Assembly: GCA_038496445.1 (NCBI GenBank)
Contig: JALMLS010000015.1
Span: 186,001 to 250,000 of the forward strand
Reading direction: 5' to 3'
Origin: Trichosphaerium sp. ATCC 40318
Taxonomy: Eukaryota > Protista > Tubulinea
DNA: 64,000 nt
The notes under the pieces were generated by a model. The model did not search any database. It was not told where the DNA came from and saw only the letters and a program-made list of their open reading frames with translations. A program made the translations under genes and the position numbers. Shown in pieces: positions 24,480 to 55,842 of the stretch; position 1 is the stretch's first letter; every line of letters begins with the position of its first letter.

Positions 24480-25184
24480 ATGGACGTCTTACATTCGTAT
24501 TTATCCCGCATATTAAGCCTTCCTGTGGAGATACATCTCCTTATTATTGACTTAGATCATGAAGTGTATATAAAGTGGCCATTACTTTCAAAACATACAG
24601 CAATGACAACAAGATTTGACAATCAGTTAAAAAAACACGGGAAATGGAAAAAAATATTAAAATCGCTTGTTATCATTCAAAGATACTGGAAACACGGTCT
24701 ATCTCATGGAACATATAAGTCTTGGTACGATAATGGACAAATAAGGAAGCAATGCCATTTTCTTGATGGTAAACTAAGCGGTGAATACCTAATATGGCAT
24801 GACAATGGCACTCTAGCAGAGCATAAACATTATGTTGATAATACACTTGAAGGTGAGTATAAGACATGGAGCTCTGATGGTCAATTGTGGGAGCACTATA
24901 ATTTTGTTAATAACAAACTACACGGAGAATACAAGTCTTGGCAACTTTATGGTATTCTATGTAAGCATTGTAGTTATGTCAATGATGAACTAGACGGAGA
25001 GTACAAGAGTTGGTATGCCAATGGTCAAATGGAGGAGAAATGTTACTATGTTGCTGGTAAACGTGAAGGAGAGTCTCGTAAATGGTATAGAGATGGTCAA
25101 CTAAAAAGCCACCATCAATATGTTAGTGGAATCCGTGTTGTTCAGAAGCTTGAAACCAGGGACAGCACGTGCATTCTACTGTAA
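24480..25184 (+). CDS. F-box-like + MORN variant (MORN_2/YwqK-like) repeat protein, intronless
   Basis: LSLPVEIHLLII N-terminus followed by 24-aa repeats G(E/T)YKSWYxNGQLxxxxxYVxxKL. Confidence 0.85.
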   Translation: MDVLHSYLSRILSLPVEIHLLIIDLDHEVYIKWPLLSKHTAMTTRFDNQLKKHGKWKKILKSLVIIQRYWKHGLSHGTYKSWYDNGQIRKQCHFLDGKLSGEYLIWHDNGTLAEHKHYVDNTLEGEYKTWSSDGQLWEHYNFVNNKLHGEYKSWQLYGILCKHCSYVNDELDGEYKSWYANGQMEEKCYYVAGKREGESRKWYRDGQLKSHHQYVSGIRVVQKLETRDSTCILL

Positions 25185-28893: not shown

Positions 28894-30171
28894 ATGGACG
28901 ACTCTAAAAGGCGTAAGGACACCTGTTTACATGATAACGTATTAATTTTCTTCTAAAAGACTTTAAACCGGCCCCACAAACTCTCTCGATATCAGACCTT
29001 CCATCAGATGTACAAATACTCATTTCAAGCTACACCAAAGAGATTTTCTCCAAATGGCACGTGAGCAATAAAGCGAAAAAATCCGAGAAAGAAAATGGAT
29101 GTTCTCGTTTTTTTAACTCGTATTAGGCATATACTCTCACGTAAGATGGCTACAATGACACATTACGATAATGAGTGTAAACGTAGAGGCACATGGCTTT
29201 CGTGGCACGATAATGGGAGAATATTCAGGTCTGTACATATGCGTAATGATGAAGCTTATGGAGAACACAAAGAGTGGAGTGATAATGGACAACTCGTTCT
29301 AAAAACATTCATGACACCTAACGGCGCCACAGGAGATTACTTTCAATGGTATGAGAATGGGCAAATGGAAATGAAGTGTTTCCTTAATAACGGTAAGGAG
29401 GAAGGTGTATACGATGAGTGGTATGATAATGGACAAAGACGTGTAAAGTGTTTTTTCATTAACGGAAAACAAGAAGGAGAAAGACTTGTTTGGCATGATA
29501 ACGGCCAACTTTTTGTAAAATGTCAACGCAAGAATGACTTGTTCGAGGGTGAGTATCGTTCATGGCATCCTAATGGACAATTACGCGTTGAAAAGCGTCT
29601 TGAGAAAGGTAAAGAAGTCGGTGAATACAAGCGTTTTTATGATAATGGACAAATCGAAATTCAATGCTTCAAGGAGAAGGATAAACAGAATGGTCCTTAT
29701 ATTCAATGGTATAAGAATGGCCAAATGGAACTTAAGTGTATGTTGAAAGATGGTCTTGAGGTTGGAGAGTATTACGAATGGTTTGATAACGGCCAGACGA
29801 AAATTCGCTGTTTTTTCATAAAAGGAAAACAACAAGGTCAAAGAAGAGTTTTTTATGATAACGGACAGCTCCGTGTTGAAGGCATAATGAAGGATGGTAA
29901 ATGGGACGGACTACTAAAAGGTTGGTGTTACTCAGGACAGCTCACATCCGAAAAACATATGCTTGATGGTGTCATAAATGGAGAGTGTAAAGAGTGGTAT
30001 AATAATGGACAGATAAAGACTCACTGTTTTAAAGTTAATGGATTGAAGCAAGGAGAGTATAAATTATGGTCAGCAAATGGTATTCTATTGGATTGGAGTA
30101 TGTTTAAGGATGACCAAAGGATTGAGCGTTTATCTAATTTAGTACAAGCAGAAGTACCAATTACGTTGTAG
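28894..30171 (+). CDS. F-box-like + MORN_2 repeat protein (two short 5' introns)
   Basis: Upstream exon SISDLPSDVQILISSYTKEIFSKW joins HILSRKMATMTHYD through a GC-AG intron (29057-29126) and aligns with the 24480 N-terminus. About 12 MORN_2 repeats follow. Confidence 0.85.
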
Positions 30172-30381: not shown

Positions 30382-33300
30382 ATGGCAACAGCAGACTTCA
30401 CAGCGCTCATAAAAGATAATCTAGAACCTTACTATGCTCTGTCTAAGAAATTTGGCGGCCCCGTTGCTGAACAGGTACGATCAGTTGGATCTAATTTAGT
30501 AACGTTACATTCTATCAAAAACTAGTTATTTCGCCACAAACCGCGCCTGTGGTTTATACAGCAATTGTTTTAGCACATTTTGGTTATTTCGCTCTACGCT
30601 CACTAAAAACGCTAGGCGGACCTCGTAAAAAAAGCTGTTGATCTTGAATTGGCACTTGTTAAAAAAGCGACAGGCACAAAGAAACCAGGCCAAGCAGCCT
30701 TTATGAAGGAGCTCGAACCTATCAGCAACCTCATGAAGCAAATTAGCGGTATGAAGGACAAGAACAGAGGTCATAAGCACTTTAACCACTTGAGTGGTGT
30801 TGGTGAAGGTAAGCGAGCGAACAGAACGCGGTTTTGACACAAAGTAAACAATATTGTCCGTTTCTTATCGGTTTTTTTTTAGGTATTCAAGGACTCGCTT
30901 GGGTTTGCGTCGAACCTACACCTGGTCCATTCGTAAAAGAAAGTATTGGATCTGCTGAATTCTGGACAAACAAAATCCGCAAAGAGTTCAAGGGAAAGTA
31001 CGTGCTGCCCCACTCATTTGCTCCTGTTTCCTAGCGGGTTTTTTTTTTTGTACTAACGTTTGCGATTTTAGAGATGCTGACCAAATTAAATGGGTAGAAG
31101 GATACACTGGCTTCCTAAAGGCTGTACGTGTCACAATAATTTTTTTTGTAGAGTTACTCTAAAAATAAGCTAAATGTCAATTTTCCCTTGTAGTTGATCC
31201 CTTACATCAAACAATACCATACAACCGGTTTATCTTGGAACACTGGTGGCGCTAAACAAGCCCCTGCTGCTAGTGGTGGCGCTCCTGTATCATCAAGCGG
31301 ATGTACGTTGTTTTGTCCGTTTCTGTAGTCAAAAAGCGTCAATATTTCTCTACGCGCGTTCCAATTATGTCTTCGTGTTTGTGACGTTGTTGCTGTACCT
31401 ACACGATTTTTTTCAAGCGTTTTTAAGCAAAAAAATCTAACACATTTCATAGCTGCCAGCGCCTTCGCTGCACTCATCAAAGAGCACATTGAACCGTATG
31501 TCGCCATCTCAAACAAATATGGAGGACCAGTAAAAGAACAAGCAGCTGCATTGAAGAAAGCTCTTGATCTCGAACTCGACTTGTTGAAAAAAGCTGAAGG
31601 CATGAAAAAACCAGCTCCAGCTGATTTCCAAAAAATGTTACAACCAATCAGTGCATTGATGATCTCTATTGGAGGCTTCAAAGATAAGAACAGAGGTCAC
31701 AAGCACTTCAACCATTTGAGTGGTGTCGGCGAAGGTAACCTTTTCAACAGGTTGGTGTTATTAATGACTTTGTAGGTGTTCAAGCGCTCGCTTGGGTTTG
31801 TATCGAACCTACACCAGGTCCTCATGTTAAGGAAACAACTGGATCTGCTGAATTCTGGACAAACAAAATTCGTAAAGAGTTCAAGGGAAAGTACGTCCTT
31901 GTCTATCATCAAACTACTTGTTTTATTGTTTATGGTACTAATCTCTTTGTGTAGAGACGCGGAACAAATCAAATGGGTTGAGGGCTTCACTGGATTCTTG
32001 AAGGCTGTACGTTGTTACTTTTGCACGAATGCGACCAATTGTACTTATTTAATGATTTATTAGTTGGTTGGATACATTAAACAATACCACACAACCGGGT
32101 TATCTTGGAACACTGGTGGTGCCAAGAGCACAGGAAGTGCTGGTGCCGTTCCTGCACCTACTGGAGGAAGTACGTATTTTTAAGAGTTTTTTTTGATTGT
32201 GAATTGTTATTCTTATTGTATTAGGTTCCGCTGGCTTCGCTGCACTCATCAAAGAGCACATTGAACCATACGTCACCATCTCAAACAAATATGGTGGACC
32301 AGTAAAAGAACAAGCAGCTGCATTGAAGAAGGCTCTTGATCTCGAACTCGACTTGTTGAAAAAAGCTGAAGGCATGAAAAAGCCAGCACCAGCTGATTTC
32401 CAAAAAATGTTACAACCAATCAGTGCATTGATGATCTCTATTGGAGGCTTCAAAGACAAGAACAGAGGACATAAATACTTCAACCATTTGAGTGGAGTCG
32501 GTGAAGGTAACTTTTACTCAAAGTATGCTATTTACCTTCTAATCTGCTTGTAGGTGTTCAAGCGCTCGCTTGGGTTTGTATTGAACCTACACCAGGTCCT
32601 CACGTCAAAGAAACAATTGGATCTGCTGAGTTCTGGACAAACAAAATCCGCAAAGAGTTCAAGGGAAAGTACGTAGTACTTACTTACACTTATAAATGCT
32701 GACGTGTATATGTAGAGACGAAGAACAAATTAAATGGGTTGAGGGTTTCACTGGATTCTTGAAAGCTGTGCGTTTGAAACATCCTCCAAGCGTTGAAACA
32801 CGAACTAATATGGTTTAGCTCGTTGTTTTCATCAAACAACACCACACAACTGGTTTATCTTGGGGCACTGGTGCTGCACGTCCAAGTGCTACTGGCGGAG
32901 CCGCTCCAGCAGGTATGTCATTATTACTACAAGCAAAAATGTAACTAGTTTGTTTTCTTAGTTGCTGGTGGCTTTGATGGTATTATCAAAGAGTTCCTCG
33001 AACCATACGTTGCATTATCTACAAAGATTGGTGGACCAGTTGCTGAACAAGTTCGTATTTTTGCTTTTCACAAATTATTTTTGGAGCGTCATTCTCACGT
33101 GATTGGTTTAGGCTAAAGCTTTTGAAAAAGCTGTAAAACTTGAAGGTGATCTCATCAAAAAGGCAAAGGGAATGAAGAAACCTGCTCCAGCTAAATTACA
33201 AGAACTCCTTGGACCTATCAGGTACGCCTTTTTTTGCTTTCTCGCCTTAAGTTTTCTTGTTGCTTTGTGTACTTATTAATGTGTGATTATTTAGCAAAGA

Positions 33301-33707
33301 GATGATGACTGTTTCAGCTTTCAAAGATAAGCATAGAGCTCACAAGGATAAAAACTTCATTGCTGGTGTTGCTGAAGGTGTTGCTGTATTAGGATGGGTT
33401 GCTGTTGAACCTGCTCCTGGACCTTATGTTAAGGGCACTATTCCTAGCTCTGAGTTCTGGACGAACAAGATCCTCACTGAGTTCAAGGGAAAGTACGTAT
33501 CACTTGATCTTTTATTTATGTTTCCTAACGCGATTGAATAGAGGTGAAATGCAAACCAATTGGGTTAAGGCATTCAACGGATTTTTAAAGGCGGTACGTA
33601 TTCTTGATGTCTTTGTTGTTATTTGTTGTTCCCGTTTACTCATTTTCTATTAGTTGTTGCCATTCATCAAGGCTGAGCATACCACTGGATTGACATGGGG
33701 AAAATAA
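30382..33707 (+). CDS. Protein of four tandem N-terminal CAP/Srv2 helical folded domains; no WH2 or C-CAP domain
   Basis: Four copies of LEPYxAxSxKxGGPVxEQ...(FNHLSGVGEG)...LAWVCVEPTPGP...SAEFWTNKIRKEFKG...HTTGLSW, joined by short G/A/P linkers. Stop directly after repeat 4 (GLTWGK*). Confidence 0.9.
31463..32770 (+). repeat. Near-identical exonic duplication (N-CAP repeats 2 and 3)
   Basis: 31463-31734 and 32234-32506 are almost identical at nucleotide level, and downstream exons also match. The introns do not. Confidence 0.9.
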
Positions 33708-34499
33708 GTTTGATTTATTGATCTTATCCTTTGTCCTTATTAAACAGAAATTTCAGAGCAATAAAATCTGTTTACTGTCAAAATTTTGTTTGTAATTTTT
33801 GTTAGGGTTCCGATTTTTTGGAATTATTACGCCTGTAAATAGAGAGACAATATTCTAATTGCTGTAGTAACGATAAACTAGTCCGTTGCAGCACATACAC
33901 GCGCTTTATTACATCGTTTCTTTGACATTCTTCAAAATGTTGTACAGTCGAAGTATTCCATTTTATTGTACATAGAGGTACAACAAAGTGCTTTTGTATC
34001 GAATCCTCCAGTTCAGTGTGTCAACAAAAGGTGAAAAAAAGTAGCTATTGTTAGCTGACACGTCAAGTTTACCATACTTTCGTAAATGCATTAAAGCTTA
34101 CGTAAACAGTACTTGTGGCGTTTGCCGCTACCTACATACAGATAATTTAGCCAAGCTTGTCCCTCTAAGTACGTCAAACAGCACATTTATAGCATGTGTA
34201 GCTTATTAGTATAGCACTTCTCGATCCAAAGACAAAGAACAGAGAAGATATTAATGTAGTATAAGTTGATTCGTTACATTACTCTAAGAAGGTAAACGAC
34301 ATAGGAAATGCCAAAAAAAAAAGAGAAATAAAATTCAGAGAAACAAAAACCAAAACAGGCAAGTAAATAATTAAAATAAAACAGTATAGTATTAATATCT
34401 ACATTTAATTTATGTGCGTATAGAACGCCTTTACATTATTTACAGAGTTTAGCCATTATGTACAAAAAAACCAAGAGTGGTTTCGTCGGGTTGGCATCT

Positions 34500-35312
34500 T
34501 TAGTGGCATGAGCATTCTCCACTTTCATGTAGATCCAAGTCGGCAATGATCGCGTAGCCGTTACCATTTTTTTTAACGTTGTTGATCCCAATTGTTCGTA
34601 GTTTATGTTCGTGGACGTCCCAGTGTGTTACTTCTTGAACGAAGAAAGACATTGGTACATCGAACTCTGTTGTTCCGTTTCGAATGCGTAAATCCGTCGT
34701 GCTTGAGGTGATAATCTTCCCGTGAGCAACTGTGCTGTCGTTTACTTGTAAATTGACGTTTTCTGATAAGTCGATTTGAATTGTCGAGACTGTCGATTCG
34801 TTCTCTTGGATGACCGTGAGGTTATGACATCTCGTTATTTCTAAGCTAGAAATAACACCGTTGAATCGTACTACGCAGTTATCGCAAGCTACGATTGAAA
34901 GATGGGCGACACGTCTTGGAATCGTAACATTTGTATTTTTGCAAAATGAAATGTCAACGCCTTGTCCCATAGTAGCTTTGTTCACAGTGATGTTACCACC
35001 GTTGAACCGAGATACCTTCCAAGCGCGTCCACGAACACCAAATACGGATGTTTTGCCAAAGGCAAGAGGATTTGCTTGAGGTTTTGGTTTTTGGCCTTGT
35101 ACGAAGTTTATGGTTGCTCCATCTTTGATATTATAATCCCCGACGCGTTTACTATCTGATAGCTCGTCTCCGGCGAAAAATAAGCGTTGAAGCGAAAGTG
35201 GAATTCCTACTTCGGCTTGAAATTTTTTCTTCAAAGAATGTATGGTGTCTTTGTCTTCAATGTCGAATGTATATGTACTGTAATGTTTGATTGTTCTTAT
35301 ATGTACTCTCAT
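34500..35312 (-). CDS. Ubiquitin-like domain fused to C-CAP (CARP beta-helix) domain, intronless
   Basis: Residues 1-73 are ubiquitin-like (TIHSLKKKFQAEVGIPLSLQRLFFAGDELSDSKRVGDYNIKDGATI), with no C-terminal GG. They are followed by VDISFCKNTNVTI...LSIVACDNCVVRFNGVISSLEITRC...TIQIDLSENVNL...IITSSTTD...EFDVP, typical of C-CAP. Confidence 0.8.
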   Translation of the reverse strand: MRVHIRTIKHYSTYTFDIEDKDTIHSLKKKFQAEVGIPLSLQRLFFAGDELSDSKRVGDYNIKDGATINFVQGQKPKPQANPLAFGKTSVFGVRGRAWKVSRFNGGNITVNKATMGQGVDISFCKNTNVTIPRRVAHLSIVACDNCVVRFNGVISSLEITRCHNLTVIQENESTVSTIQIDLSENVNLQVNDSTVAHGKIITSSTTDLRIRNGTTEFDVPMSFFVQEVTHWDVHEHKLRTIGINNVKKNGNGYAIIADLDLHESGECSCH

Positions 35313-36330
35313 TTGTTGTCTTTTGTTGTTATCCTTGTATGTTTTTTAAATTATGGTTTAAGTTAGGTCGGGCATTTCGTTCAGAAAAGTCGGTTACGCG
35401 ATTTTTTGGGAATTTTTTTCAGAAAAAAAAAAGGTCCTTTGTTTTCTCCGCCGCGTTCTTTTTGACGAACGTATTGAAGCCGTGAAATACGTGCTTTTCT
35501 ATTGTAAACAGCTTTAGAATAACATTCTTGAATTCTCCTATCGACATTTCGTGATGCAATGTCGTTTGACATTTCGTCGTAAAAACATACGTAAACAACT
35601 CCACAAGATGCCAAAGGTTCAATACGTACGTCTATAACATCACGGGTATTTTCAAACTTCACGAAATTCGATTCAGTGAAAATGGCGTCTTGGAGCGTTT
35701 ATGGGGTTTCTACGTTTTACCCACTTTTATTCACATAAGTTAACAAATGGATACCGTCTCAAAGGCATTGTATTCACTCCGGTAGTCAACGGGTTCACAC
35801 TTGGAAATTTCAATCCGGAGCAAGCTAACATTCTAAGAGCCTTTACTGCTGCGTAAACAACAAGTTTATAGTACTACCTTGCAATGTATGATGCTATATT
35901 GCCTACGTAGGCACGTACAAAGAACATGTGCTTCAATACACACGAAATTATTCGAAAAAAACCTTTGCAGAAGTGCCAAGTTACAACCGTGTTGCACATG
36001 TGAATAGTGTATTTACAATAACATTCAACAAAACGCCTTTCGGAGGAGCAAGGAGCACTACAATTTTATTTAGCATGAAATGTTACAACATATCATGTTA
36101 TATTTTTTTACACAGGGCTTCCCTCTGAACAGTTTATGATGTTCAGTACCAATACTAAACAACTTGCGAAGCTACAATTTTCCGCTAACAGACTTAATGT
36201 AACAGCACTTAAGTCAGTTGTCGAAATATGAACTCAAATACCGCATTAAACGAGATGATTTTAACAATGAATACTAGTTTATTACAACAGAAAAGTTATC
36301 ACGTGACGTGATAAGTGTTTTTTGAGTGTT

Positions 36331-54580: not shown

Positions 54581-55842
54581 TTAAAAACATTTTCTATGAA
54601 CAAGACTTGGACCATATTCATCATATTCTTCGTCAGACATAGCAGATTGTAAGTACAAATTGCTAAGACTTCCTAAAATAGATCCACCAACCCAAGCAGC
54701 AATACTTCTTTTAGGAGGTTGTATAGCCTTAACAGTAATAGTACTCGGAGCTATATTCATTAAATCATATTGTAAACGATCACCAAAACCAGGAATCATA
54801 GAGGAACCACCAGTAACAAGAACATTACGATAAAAAGTAGTACACAGTGACATGTCACATTTCCTAATTCCTTCCTGTATTATCTCAACTATTTTTCTTT
54901 TTTCTTCAACTCCTTCAATAAGACTAGGATTTAATAACACCTCAGGACAAGTATATTGTTCCTTAGATAAAACAAAGGAGTGTCCATTCATATCATATTT
55001 CAATTCTTTATCCAATTTCTTACTATAAAATGGAAGTCCTGGATCCATACAACAAACAGACTCTTTCATTGTATTATAGCTTTCAAAGGAAGGAGTGAAA
55101 GGCTTATCTGAGGATACTCTTTGTGGCTCTGGAGCTATTTTCATCAGATACTCTGTTACATCCTTACCTCCAACTTTTATGCAATATGATGCATGTTTTA
55201 GTACTTTATCTGCAAATATATATGTTATGTATGTAACATCGTAATTTGATTGAACTACACAACCCTCTGATCGTCCAGTTGCAAATAATGCAAGTACAGG
55301 ACGCGGCATGAGTAGTAAGTGGGGTGTTTTGTATTTTTCGAACATAATCTCTGTTGTCTTTTCTCTACAAGTTCATTTCATTAGCGGTTGATTGTTAAAA
55401 GGTTTGTTGCTACCTATTTTCGTTTGGGTTCATTGGCGCTTCTGTGAGAATAACTCCTGTCTCTTCAGGGGATGCACAAGCACCTTCATACATAGCATAA
55501 CGCCATATCTCATCGATAGCATCGAAATCGGTTATGTGGCCATGTTTTACTGGGTATTTCAACTCCAATATGTCTCGTAGCTTTTGGGCTTCGTTTCCAA
55601 CGTATGACCGCGGTTTTGCGTTCGTTTTACCTTGATCGGATTTCGCTTTACCCCAAACCGTTGGAAAAGTAGTAAATGGGTCATCAGAACCCGCAATACC
55701 CACTCTGCACGTCCTGGAGCCAGTATCAATTACAATGGGATCTAATTATGGGTCAACTCGACCATAAACCATCGCTCAGCGAATGGCGCTTGGTGCTAAA
55801 CAACTAAAACTAGTTTCTTCACGTACAATCGTCTTCAGACAT
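54581..55842 (-). CDS. Divergent actin / actin-related protein (2 introns)
   Basis: PIVIDTGSRTCRVGIAG, LKYPVKHG, VILTEAPMNP, GGKDVTEYL, NVLVTGGSSMIPG, AWVGGSILGSL, EYDEYGPSLVHRKCF. Confidence 0.9.

What the first reader, a model, noticed from the sequence alone, without database searches (positions are those of the whole stretch)
30382..35312. Apparent split CAP/Srv2 system: 4x N-CAP gene converging on a Ubl-C-CAP gene
Canonical CAP/Srv2 is one chain: oligomerisation domain, HFD, polyproline, WH2, CARP (established). Here one gene encodes only four HFDs. The next recognisable gene, about 800 bp away and tail-to-tail, encodes only a CARP domain behind a ubiquitin-like domain (seen). Finding both halves side by side suggests fission of an ancestral CAP locus, each half gaining a new architecture. 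That would separate filament disassembly (HFD) from monomer nucleotide recycling (CARP) (inference).
Basis: partly seen in the sequence, partly recalled or inferred. Interest (0 to 1): 0.85.

Follow-up and report, generated by a model that had tools for sequence, protein, structure and literature searches.

The report
Four-HFD gene beside Ubl-CARP gene
In a marine protist genome, one gene encodes only four copies of the filament-disassembling domain of the actin regulator CAP. The gene next to it encodes a ubiquitin-like domain fused to CAP's monomer-binding domain, so the two halves of a normally single protein lie side by side as separate genes, though a true gene split is not proven.

Summary
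Positions 30382-33707 (+) carry an intact 18-exon gene of 720 codons. It encodes four complete CAP helical folded domains (HFDs) and nothing else. Positions 35312-34500 (-) carry an intronless, transcribed gene of 270 aa with a ubiquitin-like domain and a CARP beta-helix. The genes converge, with 792 bp between their stop codons.

The CARP domain is CAP-type, not TBCC/RP2-type, by three tests:
- Pfam: CAP_C 67 bits; TBCC 23 bits, below its cut-off.
- Sequence profile against solved structures: only CAP chains match.
- Fold search: six CAP C-domains rank above RP2 and TBCC.

The fission reading is only partly supported.
- Ubl-CARP is an older family, also found in the amoebozoan Vermamoeba at about 35% identity.
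- Three Vermamoeba-type genomic loci show no HFD gene in the flanks held, up to 10 kb each side.
- The window protein does not keep the residue triad that mouse CAP1 needs for ADP-actin binding.
- I could not test whether a canonical CAP exists elsewhere in the genome.

My best reading is two specialised CAP derivatives. The four-HFD chain would act as a covalent substitute for N-CAP oligomerisation. It is a new variant of a known kind, of moderate interest.

The parts
30382..33707 (+). Four-HFD gene, coding part: 18 exons, 17 GT..AG introns of 41-150 nt, 720 codons plus TAA. Exons: 30382-30474, 30616-30808, 30883-30997, 31072-31123, 31194-31302, 31453-31734, 31776-31890, 31955-32006, 32064-32169, 32225-32506, 32554-32668, 32716-32767, 32819-32912, 32962-33050, 33112-33221, 33295-33492, 33542-33593, 33654-33707.
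   Evidence: Splice model checked by phase arithmetic, with no joined sequence built. Exon-wise Pfam CAP_N hits.
30382..31302 (+). HFD repeat 1 (exons 1-5) with its Gly/Ala/Pro/Ser linker. The HFD profile starts at residue 6, so there is no oligomerisation domain.
   Evidence: proteins 1-3; match to the end of the Dictyostelium CAP N-domain, 2.5e-4.
31453..32169 (+). HFD repeat 2 (exons 6-9) with linker.
   Evidence: CAP_N 2.6e-21 and 1.7e-13. (Dictyostelium 1s0p 4.4e-13, mouse CAP1 HFD 1.6e-11).
32225..32912 (+). HFD repeat 3 (exons 10-13) with linker; close paralogue of repeat 2.
   Evidence: 2.1e-22, 1.5e-13. (82% DNA identity to repeat 2). (22 synonymous against 7 non-synonymous codon differences).
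32962..33707 (+). HFD repeat 4 (exons 14-18), the most diverged, with a different intron pattern. It ends at the stop codon 33705-33707.
   Evidence: proteins 8-10. (human CAP1 residues 113-173, 9.6e-13).
33708..34386 (.). Spacer between the HFD stop codon and the 3' end of the Ubl-CARP transcript; no recognisable coding sequence.
   Evidence: Six-frame reading; transcript bounds.
34387..35372 (-). Ubl-CARP transcript as assembled in an MMETSP/JGI transcriptome (L002). It is colinear with the genome, so the gene has no introns.
   Evidence: 986 nt at 100% identity.
34500..35312 (-). Ubl-CARP coding sequence, 270 aa plus stop.
35091..35303 (-). Ubiquitin-like domain (residues 4-74). There is no C-terminal di-glycine, so it is not a conjugatable ubiquitin.
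   Evidence: PF00240, 1.7e-18. (alignments).
34644..35048 (-). CAP-type CARP beta-helix (residues 89-223).
   Evidence: PF08603, 66.8 bits. (profile finds CAP chains only). (fold: CAP C-domains first).

Best explanation
These are two separate, intact nuclear genes of a marine protist. The protist was sampled by MMETSP, and the nearest protein relatives are amoebozoan. Both genes derive from the CAP/Srv2 family and each is specialised.

Gene A encodes four complete HFDs on one chain, joined by linkers of about 20 residues. It lacks the N-terminal oligomerisation domain. I infer that it works like N-CAP. Several HFDs held together would bind the pointed ends of cofilin-decorated actin filaments and speed their depolymerisation. 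The covalent repeats would replace the coiled-coil oligomerisation that canonical CAP needs.

Gene B encodes a non-conjugatable ubiquitin-like domain followed by a CAP-type CARP beta-helix. It belongs to a small, older family also present in Vermamoeba. It probably handles actin monomers or a related partner, but its actin-contact residues have diverged, so this half is less certain.

The adjacency most likely records a local rearrangement of CAP-derived sequence, either an inversion or an inverted duplication. It is probably not a recent clean fission. Whether the pair replaces a canonical CAP or supplements one is open.
For: Shown:
- The 18-exon model is intact.
- There are four CAP_N sets, with CAP N-domains as the only meaningful PDB matches.
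- Repeats 2 and 3 differ by 22 synonymous and 7 non-synonymous codon changes, while their introns are only about 22-55% identical. Both copies are therefore under purifying selection.
- The mouse CAP1 HFD contact residues R118/E119 and F162/Y163 (PMC6876575) are K/D and F/W in all four repeats.
- Gene B is transcribed and has no introns.
- Its domains are ubiquitin plus CAP_C; the fold and the sequence profile are closest to CAP.
- Relatives with the same architecture occur in Vermamoeba and its near kin.

From the literature:
- The HFD is the minimal depolymerising unit, and dimerising or oligomerising it lowers the concentration needed (PMC6876575; PMC7543520).
- CARP-only CAPs of malaria parasites catalyse nucleotide exchange (PMC5951797).
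Against: - No transcript of gene A was found. Both scans of the metagenome collection failed, and that collection did not return the known transcript records either.
- No binding or activity data exist.
- In mouse CAP1, changing K365/N367/D372 to alanine abolishes ADP-actin binding. The window protein has R/A/V at these positions and the Vermamoeba group has K/N/V.
- The WH2 motif needed by yeast and mouse CAP for exchange is absent.
- Both structure models have only moderate confidence (pLDDT 62.6 and 63.4), and the C-terminal 60 residues fall below 50.
- The distribution of multi-HFD proteins could not be searched, because the spliced protein has no reference.
Confidence: 0.5

Rival explanations
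1. Strict fission. The organism's only CAP gene broke in two at this locus. Each half gained a new architecture: HFD amplification on one side and capture of a ubiquitin-like exon on the other. Together the pair replaces canonical CAP.
For: - Both halves are CAP-type and are immediate neighbours.
- Neither gene contains the other half.
- One inversion with a break inside a CAP gene yields a convergent pair and exposes the 5' end of the CARP half to a new upstream exon (inference).
- The two halves can work in trans in yeast (PMC10638096).
Against: - Ubl-CARP already exists in Vermamoeba at about 35% identity, so the fusion is old.
- In Vermamoeba no HFD gene lies in the flanks held, up to 10 kb each side, in three loci from two lineages.
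- The CARP domain is much more diverged from canonical CAP than the HFDs are.
- Absence of a canonical CAP was not tested.
Confidence: 0.2
2. Unrelated neighbours. Gene A is an extra N-CAP paralogue. Gene B is a CARP-family protein that no longer acts on actin. It might act on another nucleotide-bound partner, as TBCC and RP2 do, or on a ubiquitin-receptor-linked process. The adjacency has no functional meaning.
For: - The actin-contact triad is lost in the window protein.
- There is no WH2 motif.
- A weak sub-threshold TBCC match is shared by all four family members.
- Linkage is absent in Vermamoeba.
- Ubiquitin-like domains occur in the tubulin cofactors TBCB and TBCE (my own knowledge, not tested here).
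Against: - CAP_C outscores TBCC by more than 40 bits in every family member.
- A profile search of solved structures returns no RP2 or TBCC chain even at E = 10.
- The fold search ranks six CAP domains above RP2 and TBCC.
- Chance adjacency of the only CAP_N gene and the only CAP_C gene in the window is improbable (inference).
Confidence: 0.25
3. Artefact or decay. The four-HFD region is a pseudogene array or an assembly duplication, or the two genes are really one mis-read gene.
For: No transcript was recovered for gene A.
Against: - All 18 exons are open, with consistent phases and canonical splice sites.
- Synonymous changes outnumber non-synonymous ones 22 to 7 between repeats 2 and 3, and the introns have diverged, which rules out an assembly duplication.
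- The two genes are on opposite strands.
- Gene B's transcript ends at 34387.
Confidence: 0.03

Closest known systems
Canonical CAP/Srv2 (yeast Srv2, mammalian CAP1/2, Dictyostelium CAP)
   Same: The HFDs are about 36% identical to the Dictyostelium and mouse HFDs, with the key contact residues kept conservatively. The CARP beta-helix is of CAP type.
   Different: - Canonical CAP is one chain with an oligomerisation domain, one HFD, polyproline, WH2 and CARP.
- Here the HFD is quadrupled on its own chain, and CARP sits on another chain behind a ubiquitin-like domain.
- The oligomerisation domain, polyproline and WH2 are absent from both.
CARP-only CAP of apicomplexan parasites (Cryptosporidium CAP, PDB 2b0r; malaria-parasite CAP)
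   Same: It is a natural CAP reduced to the CARP domain, without HFD or WH2. It is the best sequence and fold match to gene B. The malaria protein still catalyses nucleotide exchange (PMC5951797).
   Different: It has no ubiquitin-like domain. Cryptosporidium keeps the K/N/acidic contact triad, whereas the window protein has R/A/V. No HFD-only partner gene is described for those parasites.
Engineered multivalent N-CAP (GST-dimerised HFD; artificial dimer or trimer domains on human N-CAP)
   Same: Several HFDs held together without the native oligomerisation domain restore or raise pointed-end depolymerisation (PMC6876575; PMC7543520). The four-HFD chain is a natural counterpart in design.
   Different: Those are laboratory constructs joined through a separate dimerising domain. 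Here the HFDs are joined head to tail in one polypeptide, and activity is untested.
TBCC / RP2 (the other CARP-domain proteins)
   Same: The same beta-helix fold class. RP2 and TBCC appear in the fold search at ranks 7 and beyond.
   Different: The Pfam TBCC score is below its cut-off (20.8-23.4 against 24.8 bits). There is no sequence-profile match to solved RP2 or TBCC chains.

Membership tests
CAP/Srv2 | Helical folded domain (Pfam CAP_N) | tested here: met
   Four sets of exon-wise CAP_N hits. PDB matches are CAP N-domains only.
CAP/Srv2 | N-terminal coiled-coil oligomerisation domain ahead of the HFD | tested here: not met
   The HFD profile starts at residue 6 of the protein. An in-frame stop lies four codons upstream of the ATG.
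CAP/Srv2 | Polyproline stretches and a WH2 motif between HFD and CARP | tested here: not met
   No WH2 family among the Pfam hits of gene B at E up to 1. The linkers of gene A are short Gly/Ala/Pro/Ser stretches. The spacer has no coding signal.
CAP/Srv2 | CARP domain (Pfam CAP_C) | tested here: met
   66.8-68.2 bits against a cut-off of 23.8. Fold search places CAP C-domains first.
CAP/Srv2 | HFD and CARP on one polypeptide | tested here: not met
   The two genes lie on opposite strands. Gene A stops at 33707; gene B's transcript spans 35372-34387.
CAP/Srv2 | HFD residues that contact actin (mouse R118/E119, F162/Y163) | tested here: inconclusive
   All four repeats have K/D and F/W at these positions. 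The changes are conservative but not identical.
CAP/Srv2 | CARP primary actin interface (mouse K365/N367/D372) | tested here: not met
   R/A/V in the window protein, K/N/V in the Vermamoeba group, K/N/E in Cryptosporidium CAP (mapped with PMC5951797 Table 1).
CAP/Srv2 | C-terminal strand-swap dimerisation and exchange-critical tail | tested here: inconclusive
   Sequence alignments to CAP stop 15-40 residues before the chain ends. The model has pLDDT below 50 from residue 211 onward.
TBCC / RP2 | Pfam TBCC domain above its gathering score | tested here: not met
   20.8-23.4 bits against a cut-off of 24.8 in all four family members.
TBCC / RP2 | Catalytic arginine finger of the GTPase-activating face | not tested
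   No tool-derived residue alignment to RP2 or TBCC was obtained. The profile search found no such chain.
Ubiquitin (conjugatable) | Beta-grasp fold with a C-terminal di-glycine | tested here: not met
   The fold is present (PF00240, 1.7e-18; TM 0.9 to ubiquitin). The chain runs on into the linker with no di-glycine. It is therefore a built-in ubiquitin-like domain.

The most novel reading that the evidence does not exclude
This organism has no canonical CAP. Instead it runs actin turnover with a natural two-gene system. One gene supplies a covalent tetra-HFD depolymerase, which needs no oligomerisation domain. The other supplies a ubiquitin-like-tagged CARP protein for monomer handling. The two are kept as neighbours since an ancient inversion split the CAP locus. 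That would be a natural experiment on the open question of why the two autonomous halves of CAP are joined in one molecule (PMC10638096).
Probability: 0.2. Interest if true: 0.7.

Novelty: new variant of a known kind. Interest (0 to 1): 0.5.

Why it matters
CAP is one of the few actin regulators found in all eukaryotes, almost always as a single multi-domain chain. Laboratory work shows that its halves can act in trans and that HFD multivalency, not the coiled coil itself, drives pointed-end depolymerisation.

A natural protein made of four HFDs alone would independently support that model. An unlinked CARP partner would show how far the two functions can be separated in a living cell.

My literature searches found no description of the Ubl-CARP architecture. 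It is present in at least two distant lineages. It also hints at a link between actin-monomer handling and ubiquitin-receptor biology.

Tried and rejected
- **Whole-protein searches.** Searching the 270-aa protein against solved structures and against the 1.84-billion representative library was swamped by polyubiquitin. Only one true relative surfaced, P0150. I then searched the CARP part alone.
- **Word-based homologue searches.** All three were used. They found only four clusters, and no short CAPs or canonical CAPs.
- **Metagenome scans.** Both were used. The HFD exon found nothing. The Ubl-CARP alignment did not even return the known JGI transcript records. The lack of an HFD transcript therefore says nothing.
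- **Exact look-ups of seven other window ORFs and of the GST ORF.** None is on record, so the organism could not be named.
- **RNA genes.** Rfam and tRNA scans of the window found nothing.
- **Tandem Repeats Finder.** It found no array, because the repeat unit of about 750 nt exceeds its longest period. blastn between the units worked.
- **Short exons.** Exons of 17-36 aa give no Pfam hit on their own.
- **Joined exons.** The exons of gene A were never joined. A spliced 720-aa protein has no reference, so I left out the searches that need it: a length-matched homologue search, a fold prediction of a whole HFD, and an exact look-up of the product.
- **Rejected readings.** TBCC/RP2 identity, an assembly duplication and a pseudogene array were all rejected.
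Full report
**Setting.** The window looks like compact eukaryotic nuclear DNA. GC content is 35-41%. ORFs are broken by very short introns. No rRNA, tRNA or other Rfam family is present. Other genes in the window encode MORN-repeat proteins, an F-box/LRR protein, a GST-like protein and an actin-family protein. Nothing in the window resembles a virus, a toxin or human DNA.

**Gene A, four HFDs.** On the + strand from 30382, open stretches in alternating frames repeat the same protein pattern four times.

- I placed the exon bounds by reading the splice sites.
- I checked the model by arithmetic only. It has 18 exons and 17 introns of 41-150 nt, all GT..AG. Phases are consistent, there is no internal stop, and the coding sequence is 2163 nt, or 720 codons plus TAA at 33705-33707.
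- Searched exon by exon, by reference, the pieces hit Pfam CAP_N (PF21938) and essentially nothing else (one sub-threshold ATP-synt_G match apart). Four successive sets cover profile positions 1-129.
- The short C-terminal exons are too small for Pfam. The last exon of repeat 1 matches the C-terminal end of the Dictyostelium CAP N-domain.
- The only meaningful solved-structure matches are CAP N-domains: Dictyostelium 1s0p/1tjf and mouse or human CAP1, at about 36% identity.
- The HFD profile starts at residue 6, and an in-frame stop lies four codons upstream. There is therefore no oligomerisation domain.
- The repeats are joined by linkers of about 20 residues rich in Gly, Ala, Pro and Ser. 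They contain no polyproline run and no WH2 motif.

The searches that need the spliced 720-aa protein were omitted.

**Is gene A functional?**

- Repeats 2 and 3 are 82% identical as DNA.
- Their exons differ at 22 synonymous and only 7 non-synonymous codons out of 147. Their introns align at only about 22-55%.
- This is purifying selection on both copies. It excludes an assembly duplication or a decaying array.
- In mouse CAP1 the HFD contacts actin through R118/E119 and F162/Y163 (PMC6876575). All four repeats have K/D and F/W at these positions, which are conservative changes.
- Intron positions give a history. Repeats 1-3 share four intron positions. Repeats 1 and 4 share a phase-0 intron that repeats 2 and 3 lack. 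Repeat 4 has one private intron and lacks another.

**Gene B, Ubl-CARP.**

- The ORF 35312-34500 (-) encodes 270 aa: ubiquitin (residues 4-74, 1.7e-18) and CAP_C (residues 89-223, 66.8 bits). TBCC scores only 23.4 bits, below its cut-off of 24.8.
- A 989-nt transcript contig from a JGI/MMETSP transcriptome matches 35372-34387 at 100% identity and is colinear. The gene is therefore expressed, has no introns and is complete.
- The ubiquitin-like domain runs on into the linker without a di-glycine.

Three lines of evidence agree on CAP.

1. Pfam: CAP_C beats TBCC by more than 40 bits in all four family members.
2. A profile of the CARP part, searched against all solved chains, finds only CAP C-domains: Cryptosporidium 2b0r at 3e-15, human CAP1 at 1.6e-10 and yeast at 1e-5. 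No RP2 or TBCC chain appears even at E = 10.
3. A model of the CARP part has a core pLDDT of 59-93 and an overall pLDDT of 63. In the fold search, six CAP C-domains take ranks 1-6 (E 1e-5 to 1e-3). RP2 follows at 4e-3 and TBCC at 0.03 or worse. The full-length model gives the same top hit.

The test does not refute the finding.

**Will it bind actin like CAP?**

- In mouse CAP1, changing K365/N367/D372 to alanine abolishes ADP-G-actin binding (PMC5951797).
- Through the tool alignment to human CAP1, these positions are K/N/E in Cryptosporidium CAP, K/N/V in the Vermamoeba group and R/A/V in the window protein.
- The second cluster, K347/Y351/Y353, is not kept either.
- There is no WH2 motif.
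- The C-terminal 60 residues align poorly and are modelled with low confidence. The dimerisation strand and the exchange-critical tail therefore cannot be judged.
- The CARP half is CAP-derived, but its activity is uncertain.

- The exhaustive search was swamped by polyubiquitin but gave one true relative, P0150. It has 34% identity over the full length and the same architecture.
- Word-based searches added two more clusters.
- Cluster membership names the source as Vermamoeba vermiformis (EukProt), an amoebozoan of the Tubulinea.
- Some members lie on long genomic contigs. I read three loci: L006, its 95%-identical variant L011, and L010 at 80% identity.
- None has an HFD match at E up to 0.1 in the flanks held. 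These are 10 kb each side in L006 and L011, and the whole 6.2-kb contig of L010.
- In L006 the neighbours are a Ras-family GTPase, a low-complexity protein and a ubiquitin-conjugating enzyme.
- So the Ubl-CARP fusion predates the split between these lineages. In the only relatives with genomic context it is not linked to an HFD gene.
- At 35% protein identity, loss of synteny is expected anyway. This weakens the fission reading but does not refute it.

**Weighing the fission idea.**

- For:
  - Both genes are CAP-type, are immediate neighbours and are complementary in content.
  - By my estimate, chance adjacency is of the order of 1 in 10,000 for single-copy genes.
  - One inversion with a break inside a CAP gene would give a convergent pair (inference).
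- Against:
  - The Ubl-CARP family is old.
  - The CARP domain is much more diverged from canonical CAP (about 21% identity) than the HFDs are (about 36%).
  - Linkage is missing in Vermamoeba.
  - It is unknown whether a canonical CAP exists elsewhere in the genome.
- Weights: strict fission about 0.2. Two specialised CAP derivatives, whatever their exact origin, about 0.5.

**Mechanism.**

- Published work shows that the HFD is the minimal pointed-end depolymerising unit. A monomeric HFD is weak. Dimerising it with GST, or adding artificial dimer or trimer domains, restores potency (PMC6876575; PMC7543520).
- A single chain of four HFDs without an oligomerisation domain is the natural equivalent. 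This step is inferred, not shown.
[quoted passage not shown] A two-gene system is therefore plausible.

**Verdict.** This is a new variant of a known kind, with interest 0.5.

Noticed in passing
window 54581-55745 (-): A divergent actin-family gene of at least two exons lies about 19 kb from the CAP-derived pair. Its last exon aligns end to end with actin residues 123-375 but scores only about 163 bits (Pfam Actin 8.6e-51). It looks like an actin-like paralogue rather than conventional actin.
   Followed up: partly
window 30475-33653 (introns of gene A): The introns are very short (41-150 nt). The donor site is unusually uniform: 10 of 17 read GTACGT and two more begin GTACG. Acceptors are nearly all TAG after a T-rich run.
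   Followed up: partly
window 30475-30615 and 33051-33111: Repeats 1 and 4 share a phase-0 intron at the same codon, which repeats 2 and 3 lack. Repeat 4 also has a private intron and lacks the one that splits the conserved Gly codon in repeats 1-3. This suggests stepwise duplication with intron loss or gain.
   Followed up: partly
window 24480-25184 (+) and 29095-30171 (+): Two single-exon genes made of MORN_2 repeats. The second ends only 210 bp upstream of the start codon of gene A, which shows how compact the genome is.
   Followed up: no
window 34500-34529 (-): The window Ubl-CARP protein runs nine residues, containing Cys and His, past the point where all the Vermamoeba-type proteins end. 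In canonical CAP the last four residues are critical for nucleotide exchange.
   Followed up: no
L006:11620-12283 (-): In the Vermamoeba-type genome, a ubiquitin-conjugating enzyme (E2) gene lies about 1 kb downstream of the Ubl-CARP gene. This is a possible but unexamined link to ubiquitin biology.
   Followed up: no
L001, L005, L010, L011 (gene calls of 273-351 aa): Vermamoeba-type Ubl-CARP proteins are recorded with N-termini of different lengths (265, 273, 294/295, 318 and 351 aa). The extension is Ser/Asn/Thr-rich, and it is unclear which start codon is used.
   Followed up: no
(tool behaviour): The metagenome-contig collection did not return the JGI transcript contigs that the look-up of encoding contigs holds (L001, L002). 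A blank from that collection therefore says nothing about expression in those samples.
   Followed up: yes
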